A program made the position numbers and the translations under genes. Below are positions 19,101 through 54,507 of a stretch of DNA of 64,000 bases, piece by piece. The DNA comes from Mytilus californianus (lineage: Eukaryota). The notes below the pieces were generated by a model. It did not search any database. It worked only from the letters and a program-made list of their open reading frames with translations, and had not been told where the DNA came from. The stretch is from assembly GCF_021869535.1 (NCBI RefSeq), contig NW_026262723.1:88970001-89034000 (forward strand), in the 5' to 3' direction. Numbering within the stretch: position 1 is the stretch's first letter; each line of letters starts with the position of its first letter.

Positions 19101-21345
19101 GACCGAGATTTGAAATTTTCAATAAGTTCTTTTTGAGTTCTCAACATATCACAACATCATTAAGGCAATCACAGAGAACTATAAGATTTGATAAAAAAAA
19201 ACTCGACAGTGAACATTTAATTTGAAATCAGCTTCAAATAACTGTGATAAACTAAGTAAATACTAGTTTGGAGATGAACTATGTCTATGAGATATTCTCC
19301 CATAAATTCATCAGCGAATTAAAACTTTTTTTTTAACAGGCACATTAAGAATGTGGCGTGGTTAAATATGGTTGTGAATGCTCATCCCTTATAAAGTTAA
19401 CACGAAATAGATCTAAGATTGAAAAGTGCAGTATGAAATTATGCAATCGGGACAAAGCAATTCTTTGAGCTACATATTTGAATTAAACATCACTGGACAT
19501 GAAAATATTAGAAAAAAACAAAACGAAAAAAGGAACTGCGAAGATGATTGATAACAACATTCACAAACAAAGAATACACAGACAGAAAAATGTTTTTCTT
19601 AAATCATGTTCACGATCATTTGTCTCAGATTTTTTTTTTTATCCCAAATATCAGATACCAAAGGGGTATTCATACTCATAAATCGCCATTGCAAATATAC
19701 CGATAAACGACCAAACAACAGTATACAAAGCACAGTATAAATCAAAGTACTGAAGTACTGAACATCGGATGACCGCTTGTTCTTGTGGATGGTCACAAGC
19801 ACTTGTCTCAGAAAAAAAAATCACATCTCTATACCTGAAAGTGAGGTTAAGGTACATAGATATATTTTTTTTCTGGGACAAGTTCGTGCGTGGATGATGA
19901 ATGAATGACAGGGAATTCAACCTCACCGTAATAACTATTATATTGTAGTGATACAAATCAGTATACTCTGGTTTGTTGTTATATATTATATTAATATTTG
20001 TATATAACAGTTACATGTATATATAATTTTCATCCATTTGTATATCATTCTATTCTACTATTCTAATAATAGTGCAGTGCAAGTGCATGGTGGACACTCT
20101 TCTGTAATAATTCGATTTTTCTAATAGATTGGATTTGAGTAGGCATTCATATTTTCTCGCAAAACGTTCTAGAGATATTCTTCCGCATGCGTTAACACAA
20201 ATTTTCGGCATTCTTGATTTGTTATTGATATATATATTTCTCACGACAAAACATTTTCATATCATTTATCTATGTTCTTAAAAATTATTTTCATGAATAT
20301 TTATTGATGAAATTGATATCTAACAAGCGATAAGGAATGTTATTTTGCGTTCGGTTATCAGTCAAAAACGAAAGTCACGTGGGTAGAAATGTCTGTGGCA
20401 ACAATACACCGGAATGCCATCACGGTCATCCGATGTAGAAATTAAAGTCTGAGCAACACGAACCCCTCCAAAAATATTTGTTAAAAAGATGACATATTTC
20501 TATAGTACAGTTGTGTTACTCATGAACACGGAGCATATTTGAATCAAATTAACGTATTTCTTTTGTTAAATTAGATATGAGCCACAGCCTTGCTGTAAAA
20601 CAGCTTAATGTAGAATATCTATTTAGTAAAGGATTGATTGATTGATTGTTGCTTGCTTAACGTCCAGTGGTAAAATTATTTCATGCATATTTAAGACGCC
20701 GAGAGAACAAATTAACAATCATACATAAGGTAGGTTCTTCATAGTATGTCGACTGGGATGAAGGACGGTGAATTTGAACTTGCAACTGGAAAATGAGAGT
20801 ATGTGTCATAGGAGCAGACATTTTGTCTTGCATCAGGACATCAACTGACTTCCAAGAGTTATTGCAAGGGGTCTTCAATGTCTATTCCGACCGGACATGG
20901 CCTTGAATTTACACATCCCGCACAGCCCTAAGTCAGCAAAGGCTTTACTGCCGGACGGGAGAAGAACATGGATGACCATATTTCTATATCAGAGTCAATC
21001 CTTGTGGTTTTAAGAAGGGATGTTGCTAAAATCAGATCTAAAAATGTGACAACTTTAGTTATTTCTATTCCACGAATTTCGAAGGCCTTAGCAAATATTT
21101 AACCCACTTTTGTTATATCATTTTGCTTTATCTGAAAGATATGTAACTTGTGAACATCTGACGTATGTCATTTGAAAGATTTACAATGAGTTGTGATTGT
21201 AGAACTCACGGTTTCAAAAAAGTGGCCTTAACTTAATTGCTTCTTCTTAACTTCCCGTAACTTGGTAGAAGTATTTAAAGACAGTTTGGCCTGTGTATTA
21301 CTGTAGTGTTTATCTTTTACCAAACTATTCTTCCATATATTGCAG

Positions 21346-22449
21346 TCTGAAAATTTTGACTACTCCATTAGTAAAGTTATAAATGATAGATATCGACATC
21401 AGCTTTCACAGTGTCAAACTTTGGAAAATATAGAGATTAAAACATCAGAGAGAATGTTTCGTCGTCAACTACAACCAAACACAGCTCATAAATTCATTTA
21501 CTGTGGGATAGAAAAGGCCGGATCAACATTCTGGAGACGTTTACTTCAATATATACAGCTAAGCAAAGTACAAACACCTTATCGAATAAGACCAGAATTA
21601 GCAAATGCTTACTATGTGGATATATCTAAATCAAACCTATTGGAAGTGCTAGGTGTACTGAAGTCATTTACAAAATTTATATTTGTGAGAAATCCCTATA
21701 CAAGGTTACTATCTGGTTTTATTGACAAAATATACTCTCCAAATCCGTATTACTGGAACAAGATAGGCATGAATGCCATCAGCTTAGCAAGGGGAATAAC
21801 AAATGCATGTGGACATGATGTATCTTTTAAAGAATTTGTAGAGTACATTATTCATTCCAATAATAATCCGAAGAGCAGACGTGACGTTCATTTTATTCCA
21901 GCACACCAATTGTGTCTTCCTTGTTACATACAATATGATTTCATTGGTAAAATAGAATCATTTGAAAAAGATGTTTTGTTCATACTGGAGAAACTAAATT
22001 TAACACAATATCTACCGGTTTTAAGAAATTTTAAAAACCAATCGGTCTTTGATGCTTTGTATGATGTAAGTCACACTTTTATAGAGTTCAGAAAAGAAGC
22101 TTCAAAATGTTTAAGCTACGAGGAGAGTCTCAAAAGAACATGGCGTAAGCTACAGTTAAGAGGAATAATCGCGGATGAAATTAATTTGCCTTTTCCCTAT
22201 AAAGAGTCAGAAAATATTACAGAAGAGAAATTATTATTAACTTTTATCAATGCAAATAAGCAGTCACAAACATTTGACCTGCGATCACAAAAACGAAAAT
22301 ATCTTATTGATGCTTTTAGTACACTTTCTTTACAGACTTTAGATAAATTAGCAGATGTCTTTATGATAGATTTTAAAATATTTGATTATAATATATACCC
22401 TTCCTTTATATTCCAGAACAAAAATATTTCGAGTCAGGACATATTTTAG
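21346..22449 (+). CDS. Carbohydrate sulfotransferase (Sulfotransfer_2 / CHST11-like), catalytic coding exon; N-terminus not resolved
   Basis: PAPS 5'-PSB motif IEKAGSTFW, 3'-PB motif FVRNPYTRLLSGF, DVHFIPAHQLCLPC, YDFIGKIESF and Y/F..DF..FDY tail. Likely acceptor TTGCAG| at 21345; an in-frame stop sits at 21304. Confidence 0.85.
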   Translation, partial: SENFDYSISKVINDRYRHQLSQCQTLENIEIKTSERMFRRQLQPNTAHKFIYCGIEKAGSTFWRRLLQYIQLSKVQTPYRIRPELANAYYVDISKSNLLEVLGVLKSFTKFIFVRNPYTRLLSGFIDKIYSPNPYYWNKIGMNAISLARGITNACGHDVSFKEFVEYIIHSNNNPKSRRDVHFIPAHQLCLPCYIQYDFIGKIESFEKDVLFILEKLNLTQYLPVLRNFKNQSVFDALYDVSHTFIEFRKEASKCLSYEESLKRTWRKLQLRGIIADEINLPFPYKESENITEEKLLLTFINANKQSQTFDLRSQKRKYLIDAFSTLSLQTLDKLADVFMIDFKIFDYNIYPSFIFQNKNISSQDIF

Positions 22450-28860: not shown

Positions 28861-30236
28861 GTGCTGTATTGTTGGTTGCCATGTGTACTGTGGAGTTTTG
28901 GGTTGTGTTAATTACTGTATTTCGTTTTTTGGGCTGCCTTGAATTAGTATTGTCTGATTGCTTTTCGACATTTTGATTGCCCTTAAAACAAATTGAACTT
29001 GCGAAATAATTAAATACCAGTCCCAAGTCAGGAGGCAGTTGGTACAGATTTGTTTAACAAGACCATTTACAACGTCCCATACAACAGCCAAAAAATACTC
29101 CACAAATTAACAAAAAAACCAACGATCTTTAACAATTCACTAACGCCCACACTAGATGACAAACTCTATCACAGTAACTGCTATCATTTACATTGATTCA
29201 TAGAATCTTTACAAGTAGACAATGAATTCAACTCGACGAAAGAAAATTTGACGGCAATACCAAATAAAAGAAAAGAAAGAGAAACAGTTGTTGATAAAAT
29301 GCCATACTTCTGTCGGACAATCGAACAGTAACCTATTTTGTAGAGTACTCAACTCCCATGTTTCTTGACCATTACCATGCTATATATTCAACTGTCTGGT
29401 GAATTGTCTTATTCTTATGAATTGTGATTCAGTAAAATTTATAAGACTAAAAAAAACAGTACAGCATTACATTTATTTTATATGACATCGTACCTGCTGT
29501 TATTAATTGATGTTTTGTCTGATTTGAATTACAAGAGAAACAATTTATTATATAACGTTGATATGAACATAGTAACATAATGCCAAAATTTAAATAATAG
29601 GAAGCTTCGCGTGCCTAAAACATTTTAATTATTTAGAGAATTTGTTAGTTTTGTTAGTAACACCAATCTCAGATTTTATCGCGACAAAGTTGCAACATGT
29701 TTTTTTAAATTTTAGCTTTATTTGTTACAACTGCTGCATTTTTGTGGATTGTAAATCATTAATAGTAATATTCACGCAAATGGGTCCATGGATTGAGAGA
29801 ATGACATGACTTTACAAGCAAGGGCCATCTATGTGATCTAAACAAAGTTACATGACACGTTTGTTAAATAACTTTTATGTTAAACGAAGACAATAACAAA
29901 CAGATAACATCACATACATGCGTGCCAACAAATCTACATATAGAATTAAATATAATAACCTATTTCAAATGTGCACGATATTACATCGTCCATTTTGTCA
30001 CATAGTTGCCCTTGAATAAGATAACATTTCATCCCTGATCAAATATTTTGGTTTGTGAACAATTGGACTTGTCTTTATGACAATATGCATATAACATCGT
30101 GTAACGTACCGGGTTGAACTAAAAAATTATCCACAATTGGGACAATAGAATTAAAACGTCTTTATTTAATCTCGTAAAGTTAAGAGATATAGACTTCCTA
30201 TATCCCATTGATCTTTGTCAATTTATTTCGCTGCAG

Positions 30237-30327
30237 GTCATTAAATGAGATTCTAATAACAGGTCCAAAGGTCGGACTAGCGGCAACCAACTATACCAGG
30301 AATCCTGATTTGTTCACCCGTCACCCG
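30237..30327 (+). CDS. Wnt8: Wnt8 exon 2 (SLNEILITGPK plus 19-aa extension; alternative internal donor at 30270/30271)
   Basis: Acceptor CTGCAG|G. W-SLNEILITGPK matches the Wnt8-diagnostic WSVNNFL(M/I)TGPK N-terminus. Strong donor CCG|GTAAGC at 30327; weaker AAG|GTCGGA at 30270; both phase 0. Confidence 0.85.
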
Positions 30328-31267
30328 GTAAGCATTGTTCTCCGTAAACGGCTAATCTGCTTTTTCTATATAGATCTCGTAAAATCCATTGTGACTATTT
30401 ATATCGGGACAAATAGAATTATTAGGGTTTGGACTGTTCCGCTTAAGAAAATGCACATCATGAAAACAAACCATTGTATTTATAAAACTGTTTTTTATCG
30501 TATTAATACGTTTATTAGACACAGTACCAGAAGATCGATGTGTACGTATTGCCAAGAGGCCACTGCTTTGGTACTGATATATTTTAAGAAATGATATATT
30601 TCGTCACATATTTTTAAGTTAATAAAATATGTAATATTACCAAAAACTTAAGATTTTCCAACTTATGGCCTCGGAAACGTAACTATCGAGGGTTATTCCA
30701 GAAACACGTGACATGCGTACTGAAGACACTAATTATGAGGAGTAGTAGCCATGTATGAACCATGATCGAGAATGTGGAAATAGGGGTTGATATCCTGAAA
30801 AAAATGCTTAAAAATGGTCGATAATTTTTGAAAATTATGAAAATATCTGAATTTGTGAAATATATGCTCCCTTGAAAGTTACAACTCGCTGATAATAATA
30901 ACACAATATAATCATATTGACAGAGAAAAGTATGACAGCAATAGTTCTTGTTTACCTTTCCTCTAGTTATTTTTCCCCATCATATTTTTTAATTGATTAT
31001 TACCTACGTTTGTTTTGCACATTCTATAATCTGAATGAGTTAGCTGGAAGTCAAATGGTATACTAGTAAGGTGGTCCAAATGGGAATATAAAGGAAGTTA
31101 ATTATGTACTAATATATACCAGAATTTGTATTAATTTTAACCACAAAAGAAACGTCTTCCCTGTAATTAAATCCGTCTCGTGCTGCGAATTTTGTCAAAC
31201 TGCTTTATTCTCTTTTCTGAACAAGGAATTTGTACGAAACATGTCTAAACATAGTAAGACTTTGTAG

Positions 31268-31394
31268 GTAGAGGCAAAAATTTTGGAAAGTGTCAGAAAG
31301 GGAACATTAAAAGCTCAAGAAGAATGTCAACATCAGTTTAAATGGGAAAGATGGAATTGTCCTGCAGATACGGCACCCTTTGATCAAGATTTTG
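31268..31394 (+). CDS. Wnt8: Wnt8 exon 3 (VEAKILES...EECQHQFKWERWNCP...DF)
   Basis: TTTGTAG| acceptor and G|GTGAGT donor; 127 nt, phase 0 to 1; conserved Wnt EC..QF.W.RWNC motif. Confidence 0.92.
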
Positions 31395-31886
31395 GTGAGT
31401 TTGTAATCACGCTGTGGATTTTTATATGCATTGAGAAGAGGAAGGTGACAATAGTATTATATACTAGAAAATGATATATGATTTGTTTGCTCATTTTCTT
31501 TTTTGAAATCACTTGAATGTCTTCAACAATATTCTTTGTAAGTTGCACTTTACAACAAAATTAAGTTAGTTCTTATATAGATATATGCCGATAACTGCTA
31601 TACATTTTTTTAAACCAAACTTACTAATGAACTTAAACGCTTAAGCGGGATGTAACAATTATAATATATATAAAATATCGACGAAGTAGGCATACAAATA
31701 CTTAACTTTGATGCTTGTTCATAATATTGTGAAAATTGACTGAAAAGCATGAATTGATATCCACATGTAAAAGAGAAGTGGTACTTCCATTTTAGTCGCA
31801 AGTCATCCAGAGGTATCGATTGTATTTACATACATATTTCAAATGCTTGTACTTTTCCCTATATGTAAAACAAATTATAATCATAT

Positions 31887-32077
31887 TTATCCTTTGTTGT
31901 CACTAACTTTTATTTTGTACACTCCATCAGGATGTGAACAAAACTGCCAGATACATTGCAAATTTTTGATATGTTGACAAAACACGCACAATACATCTGC
32001 CATACCGGAAGTTGCTGTCAGTCCGAACTCGGCTTGGTTTTTGCTCTTATATTGCCCCGTACATGGGTCTCTTGTTT
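31887..32077 (-). CDS. Nested antisense gene, exon 3 of 3 (cysteine cluster, ends ...DNKG-stop)
   Basis: Minus-strand acceptor TTTTTTGTTAATTGCAG|AA at 32078/32077, phase 1 as required by exon 2; open to the stop at 31887. Confidence 0.7.
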
Positions 32078-32572
32078 CTGCAATTAACAAAAAAGGGTTT
32101 ATCAAACTTAACGAGTCGTATTGTGTAATGAAGGTTTAATTAAAGACTATTTCATACTGACAACATCCATTGTTTGTCAGTTGATATAAACAAGAGGGAG
32201 AATATCCTCAAAGATTATGATTGTTCTAGAATTGGTTATAAAAACGACAACTACATCGATTAGAAAAAAAGAAAAGAAACTTAAATATCGTGACTGAGAT
32301 ATATTCAATTCCTGTATAAGCAAAGCATTAAACAGTACATGAACAGTGAATTGAACAATGCTGATACTTTCTAAATTAGCACAATTTGCGAACATTTTAA
32401 ACCGAAAACGTATAAATCCTCAAAGAAGCTGATAGAACTGAAAAAAAAGTGATTCCAGCAAGTCATATTAAGTAGTGGATTCTAATAAGTAAACACCGAT
32501 TTCGAATATTTCTGTAAATATGGATAACCTTGTCAATAGTGATATTTGATATAAGAATAACATTGAATATAC

Positions 32573-32968
32573 CTCCTCCATCATCAAAGGATAACATAGG
32601 GTTAACACTAGGATCGCATTCCACTTTCTGGTGACTATTTCGCCGCAATAGATATCCTTCTTTGGGTACCAGAAATTGTAGTTTTGAGCGGGATTGATGG
32701 CCTGTTAGATATCCAGTAACTCTATCGTAATACATAATAGGGATAGCTTGTATGTCATGCTCTACATGATTGTGCTGAAATACTGGAATGGCTCCAGATC
32801 TAGGATCCCATAAAAATTGGCGCCCATACTGGTCTCTAAACAAGCGTTGCTTGTTATTTATTCGTTCTCTGCTATCCTCTATACCCTGAATGATTGCCTC
32901 CGGATTCTGTTGAAAGGCTTTTGCTAAGCCATTCCAATACACATCGTTGCTCTTGCTGTGCGTGGCTC
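32573..32968 (-). CDS. Nested antisense gene, exon 2 of 3
   Basis: Acceptor TTTTTTAACAG|GA at 32969/32968; 131 uninterrupted non-repetitive codons; donor G|GTATAT at 32573/32572 (phase 1, moderately weak). Confidence 0.72.
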
Positions 32969-33084
32969 CTGTTAAAAAATGTTAAGTTTAATTGTTCATT
33001 CAAATTTGAGAGAGAATACATGGTACTAAAATTCATTTCCCATAAATTATTGTGACGAAAAGGTTAGAAAAACCCCTGACTCAC

Positions 33085-33238
33085 CGCTCGGTACATTTCT
33101 GTTATAAATTCCATATACAGGAAGATCGAATGTTGATGCTGTCCAATGTTGTGCAAAGGAAATGGCAACAATATAGGAATATAATATAATATAACAAAAA
33201 CATCCGATTTTTAGTCCAAAACACATTTTAAAATTCAT
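33085..33238 (-). CDS. Nested antisense gene, exon 1 of 3 (signal-peptide-like MNFKMCFGLKIGCFCYIILYSYIVAISFA)
   Basis: ATG at 33238; hydrophobic leader ending in ISFA; strong donor G|GTGAGT at 33085/33084, phase 1, joins exon 2 in frame across a 116-nt intron. Confidence 0.72.
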
Positions 33239-33641
33239 TTAGAATAAATGTGGTAAATATTGAGGGAAATACCGGGTAGAACATGTCTATAGAAATGTGT
33301 CACCTGACATCTTGTTGACAAGACATATGACAAATTACTAATTCCTTAGGGGTATTTCGGTCCAAAAGTTTATGGTTAGGATGTAACTTGTAATGCAATA
33401 ATATTAACCCACTTCAATATTCGTACATACGTTTTATTTAACAGTTTGAAACTTAATTGAGCAGTGTAATTTTCAGCGAGTAAAAAAATCTGAGAATGTT
33501 TAAACATACATCTGCTAAGATTTCAATGAATTCGGTCTGACATTTTAAAATATAGATTATATCACAAATTATATGAGAATGTTATCCATGCTATGTTCAT
33601 CCATCAGTGTTGTTGTAATGGAAAAAACTTTTCTGTTTCAG

Positions 33642-33767
33642 CTACCAGAGAAGCTGCTTTTGTTCAATCTATCAACGCTGCTGGAATAATGCACGTGGTC
33701 ACACAACAGTGTAGCTCTGGACAGGAAACATTTTGCACGTGTGATAATTCCAGAAATGGACAACCTG
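33642..33767 (+). CDS. Wnt8: Wnt8 exon 4 (ATREAAFVQSINAAG...CSSG...CTCD)
   Basis: TTTCAG| acceptor and G|GTAAGT donor; 126 nt, phase 1 to 1; canonical TRE.AF motif. Confidence 0.93.
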
Positions 33768-34351
33768 GTAAGTTCTGATTACAGCATTGATCAATATATT
33801 TATACATCACATTTATGTCATCTCTCAATGTTGTTGGAAGTGTAATTCGTCTGATGCGATCGGTGTATATAATGTTTAATGAATAAGGGTCAACAGTTGC
33901 AAATTAAAGATGTGAGTTTACATCGATGTGTTGTTTACTATGTTCAAAACTCGTAAATCCATTCAAAATTCACCAAAATATATATAAATTTAACTTTTGC
34001 GTAGGAGATATCTCATTAGAACATACGTTTGATACATTGTCAACCAGTTCATACAGTGTTGAAAATGTATTAAAGTTTGCCCTTCGTATTTCCCATACTC
34101 AAAATTTCAAATCAATTGAATGAAAATCAACATTTTTTCGTTCATCTTTTAGTATTTTTTCAATAGATCAGAAGAGTTTAGCTGATTTCCACAGCAAAAT
34201 CCATGTTATCTTTGTTCATGATTTAGACGATTGTTTGTATTACATCCTCCATCTTGAACTAGTAGGACTTGAACGATAGCCTTTACATATCCATATCTAT
34301 AAACAACCCATGTGCCTTAAAAGAGTATTAACATATGTTTATTTTCGACAG

Positions 34352-34494
34352 GTGGCTATAATTGGAAGTGGGGAGGATGTAGTGATAACATCAAGTTTGG
34401 AGACGAATTAACATACAAGTTTCTAAAAGGGTTGACATCTGGAAAGAATGAAAATGCTGCAATGCAGCTACAAAACTATGGTGCAGGACGCCAG
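34352..34494 (+). CDS. Wnt8: Wnt8 exon 5 (WKWGGCSDNIKFG...AAMQLQNYGAGRQ)
   Basis: CGACAG| acceptor and CAG|GTATGT donor; 143 nt; WGGCSD motif. Not in the ORF track. Confidence 0.93.
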
Positions 34495-35101
34495 GTATGT
34501 AAAAAATAGATCTTAGTGTTTTGGGTTTATTGTTCATTTTCATTTTTTTTTCTATCAAATTATTGGTTTGAATTATTTATGCAGTCTTTACTTCAAAACT
34601 TTATATTTTAACCATTGTTATCTGCTCCAAGTTTTCTAACATATGTCTTGCTAATTTTTTGTTTGTATATGCTATGATCAAAGTCTTTTGTTTTACTATG
34701 CATATTAGTTTGTTGTTTTATATGTAACTTTTTTTATTACGTGTGGTTATGGATATAGAGAACACTGCTTGAGTCGACGCCTATGGCAGTCTTGACTTTG
34801 GTTAAGGTTTTAGCTATTTATTTCTTCATTAATACTTCTTTAAATTAACAAAATGAAGAAAATCAATAAAAGCGTTTTTCTTCTGTTCATTTGATACATA
34901 AGTCTTTTTCCAAGTATTTTGTAAGATTTCTTTGGCTACGTATATCTTTCTTTGTACTATTTAGGGTAAAGCATATTCATGCTGTACAAAACAGGGAGTC
35001 GGAATTATTCAATACATATATTTAGTTTGCGTGCTTCCAGTATCACAAGTTAATATAAACGTTGATTTTTGTTTTGTAACAATTTATTTTGTTTTTTGCA
35101 G

Positions 35102-53128: not shown

Positions 53129-54507
53129 GTGAGTTTTAAAAAAAATGTAAAAAGGGCTTGTGCGTTACGAATCTTACACCATAAAGAGTACTATAAAATA
53201 GATATAGGCTAAAATGAAAAAGGCTAGCCCAATATTTTTGTTAACAGTTTAATGTCACTTTGATTTTGGGCTGCTGTCTCATTGAAAAATACACTTCATT
53301 TTAAACATTTGTTTTATTTGGTTATCTACCTTCCATTGATATATATCAATAGGATCACGTCTTCGAAGAACGCGTGCCATAATAAAAAAAACGGAGCAAA
53401 TTGACATATGAGTCAAATCTGGGTGATGTAATGTTGTTGTTGATGGTTAAAAAATTAGCTGGTCAGTGGTCTTTACTTATTTTTATTTTAATTTATTCAA
53501 CAGCAGATAATAAAACCAAACAAACAAAAAGTTAGAAAATGAGAAGATACCGAGGAAAATGATAACCCCATAATCAAAAGAAAACCAAACTAAAATAAGG
53601 ACAACAGTCTAAGAATTACAGTAAACATCTGAAAATTCGGAAATTTTGTGGGCGAAACACGACTCTGGATTCTTTGAAAGTGTGAATAAAAATGAATGTT
53701 AACCGACTTAAACATATAATGCAAACTGTTAGGACACCTGTCAATTGTTTATGTGCAAATTTCGTTTCTTTTGTTTGGTAACTGTCTCATTGATGTACAA
53801 AATTTATCAGTTTTGAGATGAATTTGCTCACAAAATATTGAAAAATATAATGATTGCTAGGCAAACATTTGTAATGCAAAGTGTAAAGGAATAATGACTA
53901 AGATGAAAACAACATATTATGGAGAAGTGAAATACTGAACGACAATTATCTTTTATACAAAGATAATGGAAGTCGTACATAAAAAGGCAAATTTCTGTAA
54001 AAACTGACCATCTTTTACCCTAGTTTGGCCTGTAATGGACAGCTGTTTCGAAAAGTGCGTTCACAATTAATGATGGGAGTGCGTCATACTCCAGGTATAG
54101 AAAATATTTCAACCATATTCAAATAAATGTCCATGTTTGGCATTGCTTGGGAGTTTTTTTTTTCTGATGTTAACAAATTTTGAATACAAAGAATGATATT
54201 GTCCTTCGTCTATCTATCTACCACTGTCCAGTTTCTTGTCAAGTTAACTCTGTGTATATAAAAGTATCTGTTTATTCCTTTAATAAAAGTTTTATTCTGA
54301 CGGTTCAGGTAACATCTGGAACATTCAAGGGAATGGTGATATCTTTATACCACATGCTTGTAATCATTCAAATAATTGTTACTCCCGAACAAATGTGTCA
54401 TGATCTTGGCCTTATCAATATTTTGAATGATTGATTAACGGATCGATCATTTGTGTTGTTGGCCAGGTTTTGTTAATCTTTGCCTTAAAATACTTTTTTT
54501 ATTACAG

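What the first reader, a model, noticed from the sequence alone, without database searches (positions are those of the whole stretch)
31887..33238. Unrecognised secreted prepropeptide-like gene nested antisense inside Wnt8 intron 3
Three separate ORF-track fragments splice with GT-AG sites in matching phase 1 (introns 32969-33084 and 32078-32572) into a 246-aa protein. It has a signal-peptide-like leader, a Cys-free pro-region, a dibasic RR at 32640-32645, then an 85-residue segment with six cysteines (C-x19-C-x24-C-x2-C-x7-C-x4-C) ending in ...NKG-stop, a possible amidation Gly. This resembles the layout of a neurohormone, toxin or defence-peptide precursor, but the spacing does not match the CHH/ITP or eclosion-hormone patterns I know. 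No counterpart was seen in intron 3 of the paralog (53129-54507).
Basis: partly seen in the sequence, partly recalled or inferred. Interest (0 to 1): 0.82.

Follow-up and report, generated by a model that had tools for sequence, protein, structure and literature searches.

The report
Conserved secreted orphan gene inside Wnt8
A real, spliced gene for a small secreted cysteine-rich protein of unknown function sits backwards inside an intron of the embryo-signal gene Wnt8, and it has kept that exact position in mussels, scallops and oysters, but it does not look like a hormone precursor.

Summary
Minus-strand exons 33238-33085, 32968-32573 and 32077-31887 join through two phase-1 GT-AG introns into a 246-aa ORF. 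An RNA-seq contig from a close relative (about 98% identical) carries both junctions exactly. No RNA was found for the window's own species label.

- **Copy number:** the gene is single copy in this 1.65-Gb genome.
- **Selection:** dN/dS is 0.14 against the Mytilus galloprovincialis orthologue.
- **Orthologues:** they exist in mussels, scallops and oysters. All are RefSeq "uncharacterized protein" models.
- **Position:** in all three orders the gene has three coding exons and two phase-1 introns. It lies antisense in the same Wnt8 intron.
- **Family:** Pfam, PDB sequences and a profile search of 1.84 billion representatives link it to no named family. AlphaFold2 failed, with pLDDT 37.

The prohormone reading is weak. 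The leader and six cysteines are conserved. The RR site and terminal Gly are confined to mussels, and the "pro-region" holds a strongly conserved motif.

Best reading: a pteriomorph-restricted secreted disulfide-bonded protein that probably stays intact after leader removal. Its ligand and role are unknown.

The parts
33085..33238 (-). Coding exon 1 (residues 1-51 plus the first base of codon 52). It holds the ATG at 33238-33236 and the hydrophobic leader, with a probable cleavage after SFA (residue 29, 33152).
   Evidence: best 12-mer Kyte-Doolittle score is 2.2 at residues 17-28, and all full-length orthologues have an equivalent leader. RNA contig X4 record 18 covers 33084-33232.
32969..33084 (-). 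Intron 1, 116 nt, GT..AG, phase 1.
   Evidence: The junction is seen in RNA-seq contig X4. It is 78% identical to M. galloprovincialis, against 89-90% for the flanking exons.
32573..32968 (-). Coding exon 2 (residues 52-183). It holds the conserved N-terminal module, the RR at 32640-32645 and the first conserved Cys (C169, 32616-32618).
   Evidence: It is 87% identical at the amino-acid level to M. galloprovincialis LOC143045765.
32781..32834 (-). Most conserved N-terminal motif, residues 97-114 (DQYGRQFLWDPRSGAIPV).
   Evidence: Alignments A1 and A2. D, G, W-D, G and P-V are kept in mussels, scallops and oysters.
32078..32572 (-). Intron 2, 495 nt, GT..AG, phase 1.
   Evidence: The junction is seen in X1 (depth 58) and X4. 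It is 74% identical to M. galloprovincialis, with gaps.
31887..32077 (-). Coding exon 3 (residues 184-246 plus the stop at 31887-31889). It holds five of the six conserved cysteines, with an invariant C-x2-C-x7-C-x4-C core, and is the most conserved part of the protein.
   Evidence: Against a mussel that is about 60% identical overall, dN is 0.059 while dS is saturated.
33239..33641 (-). 5' flank between the ATG and the Wnt8 exon, probably the promoter and 5' UTR of the nested gene.
   Evidence: It is 88% identical to M. galloprovincialis, close to the level of the coding exons. RNA contigs cover 33264-33423 (X4) and 33084-33670 (X1). The 5' UTR of the L007 transcript aligns to 33303-33239. 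The function is inferred.
31395..31886 (-). Probable 3' UTR. It seems to run on into the Wnt8 exon at 31267-31394.
   Evidence: X1 record 3 and X4 record 17 run unbroken from exon 3 to 31365. In X1 the depth is like that of exon 3 (52.7), against 13 for intron 2. The first minus-strand AATAAA is at 31209. Contigs do not show the strand, so this is inferred.
31395..33641 (+). Host intron of Wnt8 (2247 nt), between the exon ending ...KWERWNCP and the exon starting ATREAAF.
   Evidence: The GT..AG junction 31394>33642 appears in RNA contigs of X1 and X4. The Wnt8 assignment rests.

Best explanation
This is a genuine, single-copy, three-exon protein-coding gene on the minus strand, wholly contained (coding part) in an intron of Wnt8. 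It belongs to an unnamed protein family found so far only in pteriomorph bivalves (mussels, scallops, oysters).

The product most likely works as follows:
1. It enters the secretory pathway through a cleaved N-terminal leader.
2. It folds into an N-terminal module (two predicted helices, then short strands carrying the D-Q-Y-G-R-x-F-x-W-D...G-x-I-P-V motif).
3. A variable linker follows, which is Pro/Tyr-rich in oysters.
4. The C-terminus is a compact domain locked by three disulfides from six invariant cysteines.
5. It is released as an intact extracellular protein of roughly 25 kDa, acting as a soluble ligand, modulator or matrix component. It is probably not a precursor cut into a small peptide.

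Shown here: the gene structure, splicing in a close relative, purifying selection, single copy, family range, and conserved nesting. Inferred: secretion, disulfide bonding, lack of processing, and an extracellular role.

The gene entered the Wnt8 intron before the three orders split. It has stayed because a nested gene cannot easily be moved without damaging its host or losing shared regulatory DNA.
For: **Gene model and transcription**
- Both junctions lie in one RNA-seq contig (X4), and one junction also in X1.
- An uninterrupted transcript contig from another mussel (L007) encodes the full protein.

**Selection**
- Exons are 89-90% identical to M. galloprovincialis with no gaps, while the nested introns are 74-78% identical with gaps.
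- dN/dS is 0.136 overall and 0.09 for exon 3.

**Copy number and orthologues**
- The gene is single copy in 1.65 Gb.
- Orthologues occur in Mytilus, Ylistrum, Mizuhopecten, Saccostrea (two species), Crassostrea virginica and Ostrea edulis.
- Mussel, scallop and oyster all have three coding exons and two phase-1 introns.
- All three have the gene in the same Wnt8 intron on the opposite strand. A metagenome contig, L010, shows the same arrangement.

**Protein features**
- The leader is present in every full-length member, and there is no second hydrophobic segment.
- Six cysteines are conserved, with an invariant C-x2-C-x7-C-x4-C.
- The RR site and terminal Gly are not conserved.
Against: - No RNA evidence was obtained from the window's own species label. 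X21 was sampled at about 6% and showed nothing, and X22-24 hold none of the words.
- Secretion rests on hydropathy and the -3/-1 rule only. No signal-peptide predictor was available.
- Both AlphaFold2 runs failed (pLDDT 37), so the domain picture rests on secondary-structure hints and conservation.
- In run X1 the dominant junction into exon 2 comes from another upstream exon without an in-frame ATG. Some of the locus's transcripts may therefore not encode the secreted protein.
- No functional data of any kind exist for any family member. Literature searches found nothing.
Confidence: 0.75

Rival explanations
1. It is a prohormone, neuropeptide or defence-peptide precursor. After leader removal a convertase cuts at RR160-161, releasing an 85-residue six-Cys peptide whose terminal Gly is turned into an amide.
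For: The leader, the RR eight residues before the first Cys, and the ...NKG end are all present in the window and in M. galloprovincialis. The C-terminal part is the most conserved. One other mussel-like sequence has RR and another has RK at about the same place.
Against: - Scallops and oysters have no basic pair at that position. The scallop RR lies after the first Cys.
- P0006 has no basic residue there at all.
- The terminal Gly is missing in scallops and oysters.
- The N-terminal region is well conserved, with its own motif, which is unlike a spacer.
- There is no hit to any neurohormone Pfam family.
- The gene is single copy and under purifying selection, unlike the multi-copy, fast-evolving mussel antimicrobial peptide genes (my own knowledge).
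Confidence: 0.12
2. The transcript is mainly a natural antisense regulator of Wnt8, and the ORF is secondary. Its ends overlap the two flanking Wnt8 exons, so it acts through RNA pairing or transcriptional interference.
For: - X1 shows an alternative upstream exon ending at 33646, antisense over the start of Wnt8 exon 33642-33768, with no in-frame ATG.
- Contigs run from exon 3 into the Wnt8 exon ending at 31394, and the first poly(A) signal lies beyond it at 31209.
- The host and nested transcripts occur in the same RNA runs.
Against: dN/dS of 0.14 with saturated synonymous change, six invariant cysteines, and conserved intron phases over three bivalve orders all show selection on the protein. 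Contigs give no strand, so the overlaps are not proven. The two roles are not exclusive.
Confidence: 0.05
3. It is a chance run of ORFs, or a relic of a transposon or virus, inside an AT-rich intron.
For: The genome is 32% G+C and full of short ORFs. The protein has no Pfam domain.
Against: The gene is single copy. It is spliced in RNA, has orthologues in three orders at the same place, is under purifying selection, and matches no transposon or viral family.
Confidence: 0.01

Closest known systems
RefSeq 'uncharacterized protein' models: LOC143045765 (Mytilus galloprovincialis), LOC110443212 (Mizuhopecten yessoensis), LOC132544538 (Ylistrum balloti), LOC134260343 and LOC133184232 (Saccostrea), LOC111121328 (Crassostrea virginica), LOC125670183 (Ostrea edulis)
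   Same: They are true orthologues. They share the length (226-257 aa), the leader, the N-terminal motif, the six cysteines, three coding exons and two phase-1 introns. Where checked, they lie in the same antisense position in the Wnt8 intron.
   Different: Nothing essential differs. Oysters carry a Pro/Tyr-rich insertion in the middle. The RR and terminal Gly are mussel-specific. None has a name, a domain or a published function.
Six-cysteine arthropod neurohormones (CHH/ITP/MIH family, eclosion hormone) and their precursors
   Same: They share a leader, six cysteines in a stretch of roughly 70-85 residues, and (in mussels only) a basic pair upstream and a terminal Gly.
   Different: There is no Pfam hit even at E of 10. 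The processing signals are not conserved in the family. The N-terminal part is conserved, not a spacer.
Opposite-strand genes nested in introns, such as OMG, EVI2A and EVI2B in an intron of human NF1, or Pcp in the Drosophila Gart/ade3 intron (my own knowledge)
   Same: A complete small gene with its own promoter lies antisense inside an intron of a larger host, and the pairing is kept over long evolutionary times.
   Different: Here the host is a Wnt ligand gene and the guest is itself a spliced, secreted-protein gene. Its UTRs or alternative exon may reach the host's exons. No report of a nested gene in Wnt8 was found.
Mussel cysteine-rich antimicrobial peptides (defensins, mytilins, myticins, mytimycin)
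   Same: They are secreted, cysteine-rich and mollusc-restricted.
   Different: By my own knowledge, those are short precursors in multi-copy, highly polymorphic gene families. This gene is single copy and under strong purifying selection. It encodes a much longer protein with a conserved non-Cys domain, and is shared with oysters and scallops.

Membership tests
Unnamed pteriomorph family (LOC143045765-like) | Significant full-length sequence similarity to the other members | tested here: met
   Exon 2 matches P0001 at E 7e-73. tblastn identity against the M. galloprovincialis locus is 86%, 87% and 90% for exons 1, 2 and 3.
Unnamed pteriomorph family (LOC143045765-like) | N-terminal leader, D-Q-Y-G-R..W-D..G-x-I-P-V motif, and six cysteines ending C-x2-C-x7-C-x4-C | tested here: met
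Unnamed pteriomorph family (LOC143045765-like) | Three coding exons, two phase-1 introns, antisense in the Wnt8 intron between the WNCP and ATREAAF exons | tested here: met
   Window. Mussel, scallop and oyster.
Prohormone / neuropeptide precursor | Signal peptide | tested here: met
   Hydropathy and an S-F-A cleavage motif. No dedicated predictor was run.
Prohormone / neuropeptide precursor | Conserved basic cleavage site flanking the conserved peptide | tested here: not met
   The RR is present only in some mussels. It is absent at that position in scallops, oysters and P0006.
Prohormone / neuropeptide precursor | Conserved C-terminal Gly as amide donor | tested here: not met
   Gly is found only in mytilid sequences. 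Scallops end in M or T and oysters in Y.
Prohormone / neuropeptide precursor | Processed peptide detected in tissue | not testable with these tools
   This needs peptidomics.
CHH/ITP/MIH and eclosion hormone families | Match to the family profile (Pfam) | tested here: not met
   No such hit at E up to 10 for the exon products, or up to 1 for the full-length orthologues.
Transposon or viral protein | Multiple copies in the genome, or a match to a mobile-element domain | tested here: not met
   Only one locus in 1.65 Gb, and no domain hit.
COLFI / GON / fibrinogen-C-like domains (lead from the language-model atlas) | Profile match and a domain length of about 200 aa | tested here: not met
   Atlas scores were 0.82-0.87 with few shared features, below the tool's own reliability bar. 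There is no Pfam hit, and the conserved domain is only about 80 aa.

The most novel reading that the evidence does not exclude
The guest and its host may be functionally coupled. The secreted protein would be a pteriomorph-specific extracellular partner or modulator of Wnt8 signalling, or the antisense overlaps of its transcripts with the two flanking Wnt8 exons would tune Wnt8 output. On this reading the pairing has been kept since the Palaeozoic split of mussels, scallops and oysters because the two genes are regulated as one unit. The evidence does not exclude this. Both transcripts occur in the same RNA runs, the intergenic 5' flank is as conserved as coding sequence, and an alternative exon overlaps a Wnt8 exon.
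Probability: 0.1. Interest if true: 0.8.

Novelty: new member of a known kind. Interest (0 to 1): 0.45.

Why it matters
The gene gives a clean example of an opposite-strand nested gene pair that has been stable across three bivalve orders, with a key developmental ligand (Wnt8) as host. It defines a taxon-restricted secreted protein family with no domain annotation and no literature.

The family is easy to test in oyster or mussel embryos, which are tractable and economically important. If expression turns out to be coupled to Wnt8, the locus would be a compact model for how nested genes and their hosts share or fight over regulation.

If not, it remains an ordinary lineage-specific secreted protein. 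The main practical value would then be correct annotation, and a warning that the mussel-only RR and terminal Gly features should not be read as a hormone signature.

Tried and rejected
- **Pfam** on the three exon products and on full-length orthologues found nothing meaningful. The best hit was PNPOx-like at E 0.022, well below its cut-off.
- **A profile of the family against PDB sequences** gave one chance hit at E 0.49.
- **A profile search of 1.84 billion representatives** gave 14 hits. These were family members plus two repeat proteins (P0019, P0020) that share only the short Y-D-P-x-Y-G-Y-[IV]-P-like motif, which I treat as low-complexity resemblance.
- **AlphaFold2** was run twice, with 6 and 16 aligned sequences. 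Mean pLDDT was 37 both times, so no fold search was run, because a low-confidence model gives meaningless matches.
- **The protein atlas** gave a best score of 0.77 for the whole protein. The C-terminal part scored 0.87 to COLFI/GON/fibrinogen clusters with few shared features. The N-terminal part gave no usable hit. I rejected these as leads.
- **Literature searches** by all LOC and XP identifiers, and by Wnt8 plus nested gene, found nothing relevant.
- **RNA from the window's own species label** showed nothing: raw-read run X21 laid only 4 partial reads at 31304-31437, outside the nested coding exons.
- **Complex prediction with Wnt8** was not run, because I do not claim binding and the monomer does not fold confidently.
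- **Earlier scan notes** by words gave nothing.

Full report
**1. The observation**

On the minus strand, three segments join into one ORF of 741 nt, giving 246 aa plus a stop. They are 33238-33085, 32968-32573 and 32077-31887.

- Both introns start with GT and end with AG after a T-rich tract. Intron 1 is 33084-32969 (116 nt) and intron 2 is 32572-32078 (495 nt).
- Both introns are phase 1.
- The RR pair is residues 160-161 (32645-32640).
- Six cysteines sit at 169, 189, 214, 217, 225 and 230.
- The protein ends NKG-stop.
- Outside the leader there is no cysteine before residue 169.

**2. Transcription and splicing**

I laid four public runs on 30500-34500.

- In X4, a library recorded as RNA-seq, one 605-nt contig reads 32017-32077 | 32573-32967 | 33084-33232. 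That is both predicted junctions, with CT..AC on the plus strand, so GT..AG on the minus strand.
- X1 shows the 32077>32573 junction at depth 58.
- The same runs show the host's plus-strand junction 31394>33642 (GT..AG). This fixes the host intron at 31395-33641 (2247 nt).

There is an important caveat. These runs are from a close relative (organism A, or a "mollusc metagenome"), about 98% identical in exon 2. RNA runs carrying the window's own species label gave nothing.

A 1610-nt contig from another mussel (L007) encodes the whole protein without interruption. It is therefore a spliced transcript.

**3. A real gene under selection**

- The genome (1.65 Gb) has a single locus, so this is not a repeat.
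- Against the M. galloprovincialis locus, the three coding exons are 89-90% identical with no gaps. The two nested introns are 74-78% identical with gaps. The 403 nt between the ATG and the Wnt8 exon are 88% identical.
- Nei-Gojobori dN/dS is 0.136 overall (dS 0.40) and 0.09 for exon 3.
- Against the more distant L007 mussel, synonymous sites are saturated, while exon 3 has dN of only 0.059.

**4. Relatives**

I ran word-based searches and one exhaustive profile search of 1.84 billion representatives. They find the family only in the following places:

- mussels (M. galloprovincialis LOC143045765, 247 aa, and unnamed transcript or genomic contigs);
- scallops (Ylistrum balloti and Mizuhopecten yessoensis);
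- oysters (Saccostrea cucullata, S. echinata, Crassostrea virginica and Ostrea edulis);
- a few unnamed contigs.

Every named member is an "uncharacterized protein". Pfam gives nothing, and PDB sequences give nothing. No paper in the held library mentions any of the identifiers.

**5. The nesting is ancient**

In M. galloprovincialis (L005), Ylistrum (L006) and Saccostrea (L008) the called gene lies inside a gene whose product hits PF00110 (wnt), on the other strand.

tblastn with the window's two flanking Wnt8 exons and the nested exons places the guest between the same two host exons in all three species. These are the exon ending ...KWERWNCP and the exon starting ATREAAF. A metagenome contig (L010) shows the same neighbourhood.

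Exact reconstruction of the three gene models gives three coding exons and two phase-1 GT-AG introns each time. The window's host is Wnt8-like: its best PDB match is Wnt-8a at 2.5e-42, against 6e-27 for Wnt-7a.

The pair therefore predates the split of Mytilida, Pectinida and Ostreida, which is early Palaeozoic by my own knowledge. The tandem Wnt8 paralogue in the window has no copy.

**6. What the protein looks like**

- All full-length members start with a hydrophobic leader. None has a second hydrophobic segment.
- The N-terminal half keeps V-Y-W..L..A-F-x-Q-N-P and D-Q-[YH]-G-[RN]-x-[FY]-x-W-D-x-x-x-G-x-[IV]-P-V.
- The middle is variable. Oysters have a Pro/Tyr-rich insertion there.
- The C-terminal part of about 80 residues has six conserved cysteines. 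The first two spacings vary (19-26 and 20-24). The last three, C-x2-C-x7-C-x4-C, are invariant.
- AlphaFold2 gave only weak secondary-structure hints and pLDDT 37, so no fold comparison is justified. The hints were two helices then strands in the N-terminal half, and a helix over the C-x2-C followed by a hairpin at the end.

**7. Mechanism**

I commit to a secreted, disulfide-bonded, intact two-module extracellular protein.

The prohormone layout is not a property of the family. The RR is missing at that place in scallops, oysters and one mussel-like sequence. The terminal Gly is mytilid-only. The putative pro-region is conserved. Mussel-specific cleavage at RR cannot be excluded.

**8. Things not explained**

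- In X1 the main junction into exon 2 comes from 33646. That is an upstream exon antisense over the first bases of Wnt8 exon 33642-33768. Its frame is open but has no ATG.
- Contigs run from exon 3 into the Wnt8 exon that ends at 31394, and the first minus-strand AATAAA is at 31209.

The transcripts may therefore overlap both flanking host exons, which leaves room for a regulatory tie to Wnt8.

**9. Verdict**

This is a real and correctly delimited gene and a member of an unstudied pteriomorph-restricted family. It is already modelled but unnamed in RefSeq for relatives. The hormone-precursor reading is weak. The conserved nesting in Wnt8 is the noteworthy part.

Noticed in passing
window 33642-33700 (minus strand), joined to 32968: Run X1 has a contig joining the acceptor of nested exon 2 to an upstream exon ending at 33646 (GT..AG on the minus strand). 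That exon is antisense to the start of the Wnt8 exon. The frame into exon 2 is open for 47 codons but has no ATG. In X1, exon 2 depth is 88.5 against about 12 over exon 1.
   Followed up: partly
window 31209-31886: RNA contigs run unbroken from nested exon 3 into the Wnt8 exon at 31267-31394. The first minus-strand AATAAA is at 31209, so the nested gene's 3' UTR probably overlaps a host exon antisense.
   Followed up: partly
window 29451-30509: A block of about 1 kb is 91% identical to M. galloprovincialis. That is more conserved than the nested coding exons and far above the intron background (72-80%). It includes a short Wnt8 exon near 30250-30316 (...ILITGPKVGLAATNYTRNPDLFTRHP). An unspliced 1918-nt RNA contig of X4 runs from 31394 down past 30500, far enough to span most of the block if collinear. 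It may be a conserved enhancer, an alternative exon or an antisense RNA.
   Followed up: no
window 21340-22449 (+): An intact 369-aa ORF lies upstream of Wnt8. The gene called next to Wnt8 at the M. galloprovincialis locus hits PF03567 (Sulfotransfer_2), which suggests the window ORF is a carbohydrate sulfotransferase-like gene in conserved synteny. The ORF itself was not scanned. Scallop and oyster have a 7TM receptor (Srw-like) on the other side of Wnt8, downstream of its last exon.
   Followed up: no
P0019 (838 aa, unnamed ENA contig): An unrelated long protein carries many tandem copies of a Y-x-Y-D-P-[YL]-[YF]-G-[YF]-[IV]-P motif. This resembles the family's W-D-P-x-x-G-x-I-P-V core. It may be a shared short structural motif or a chance resemblance.
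   Followed up: no
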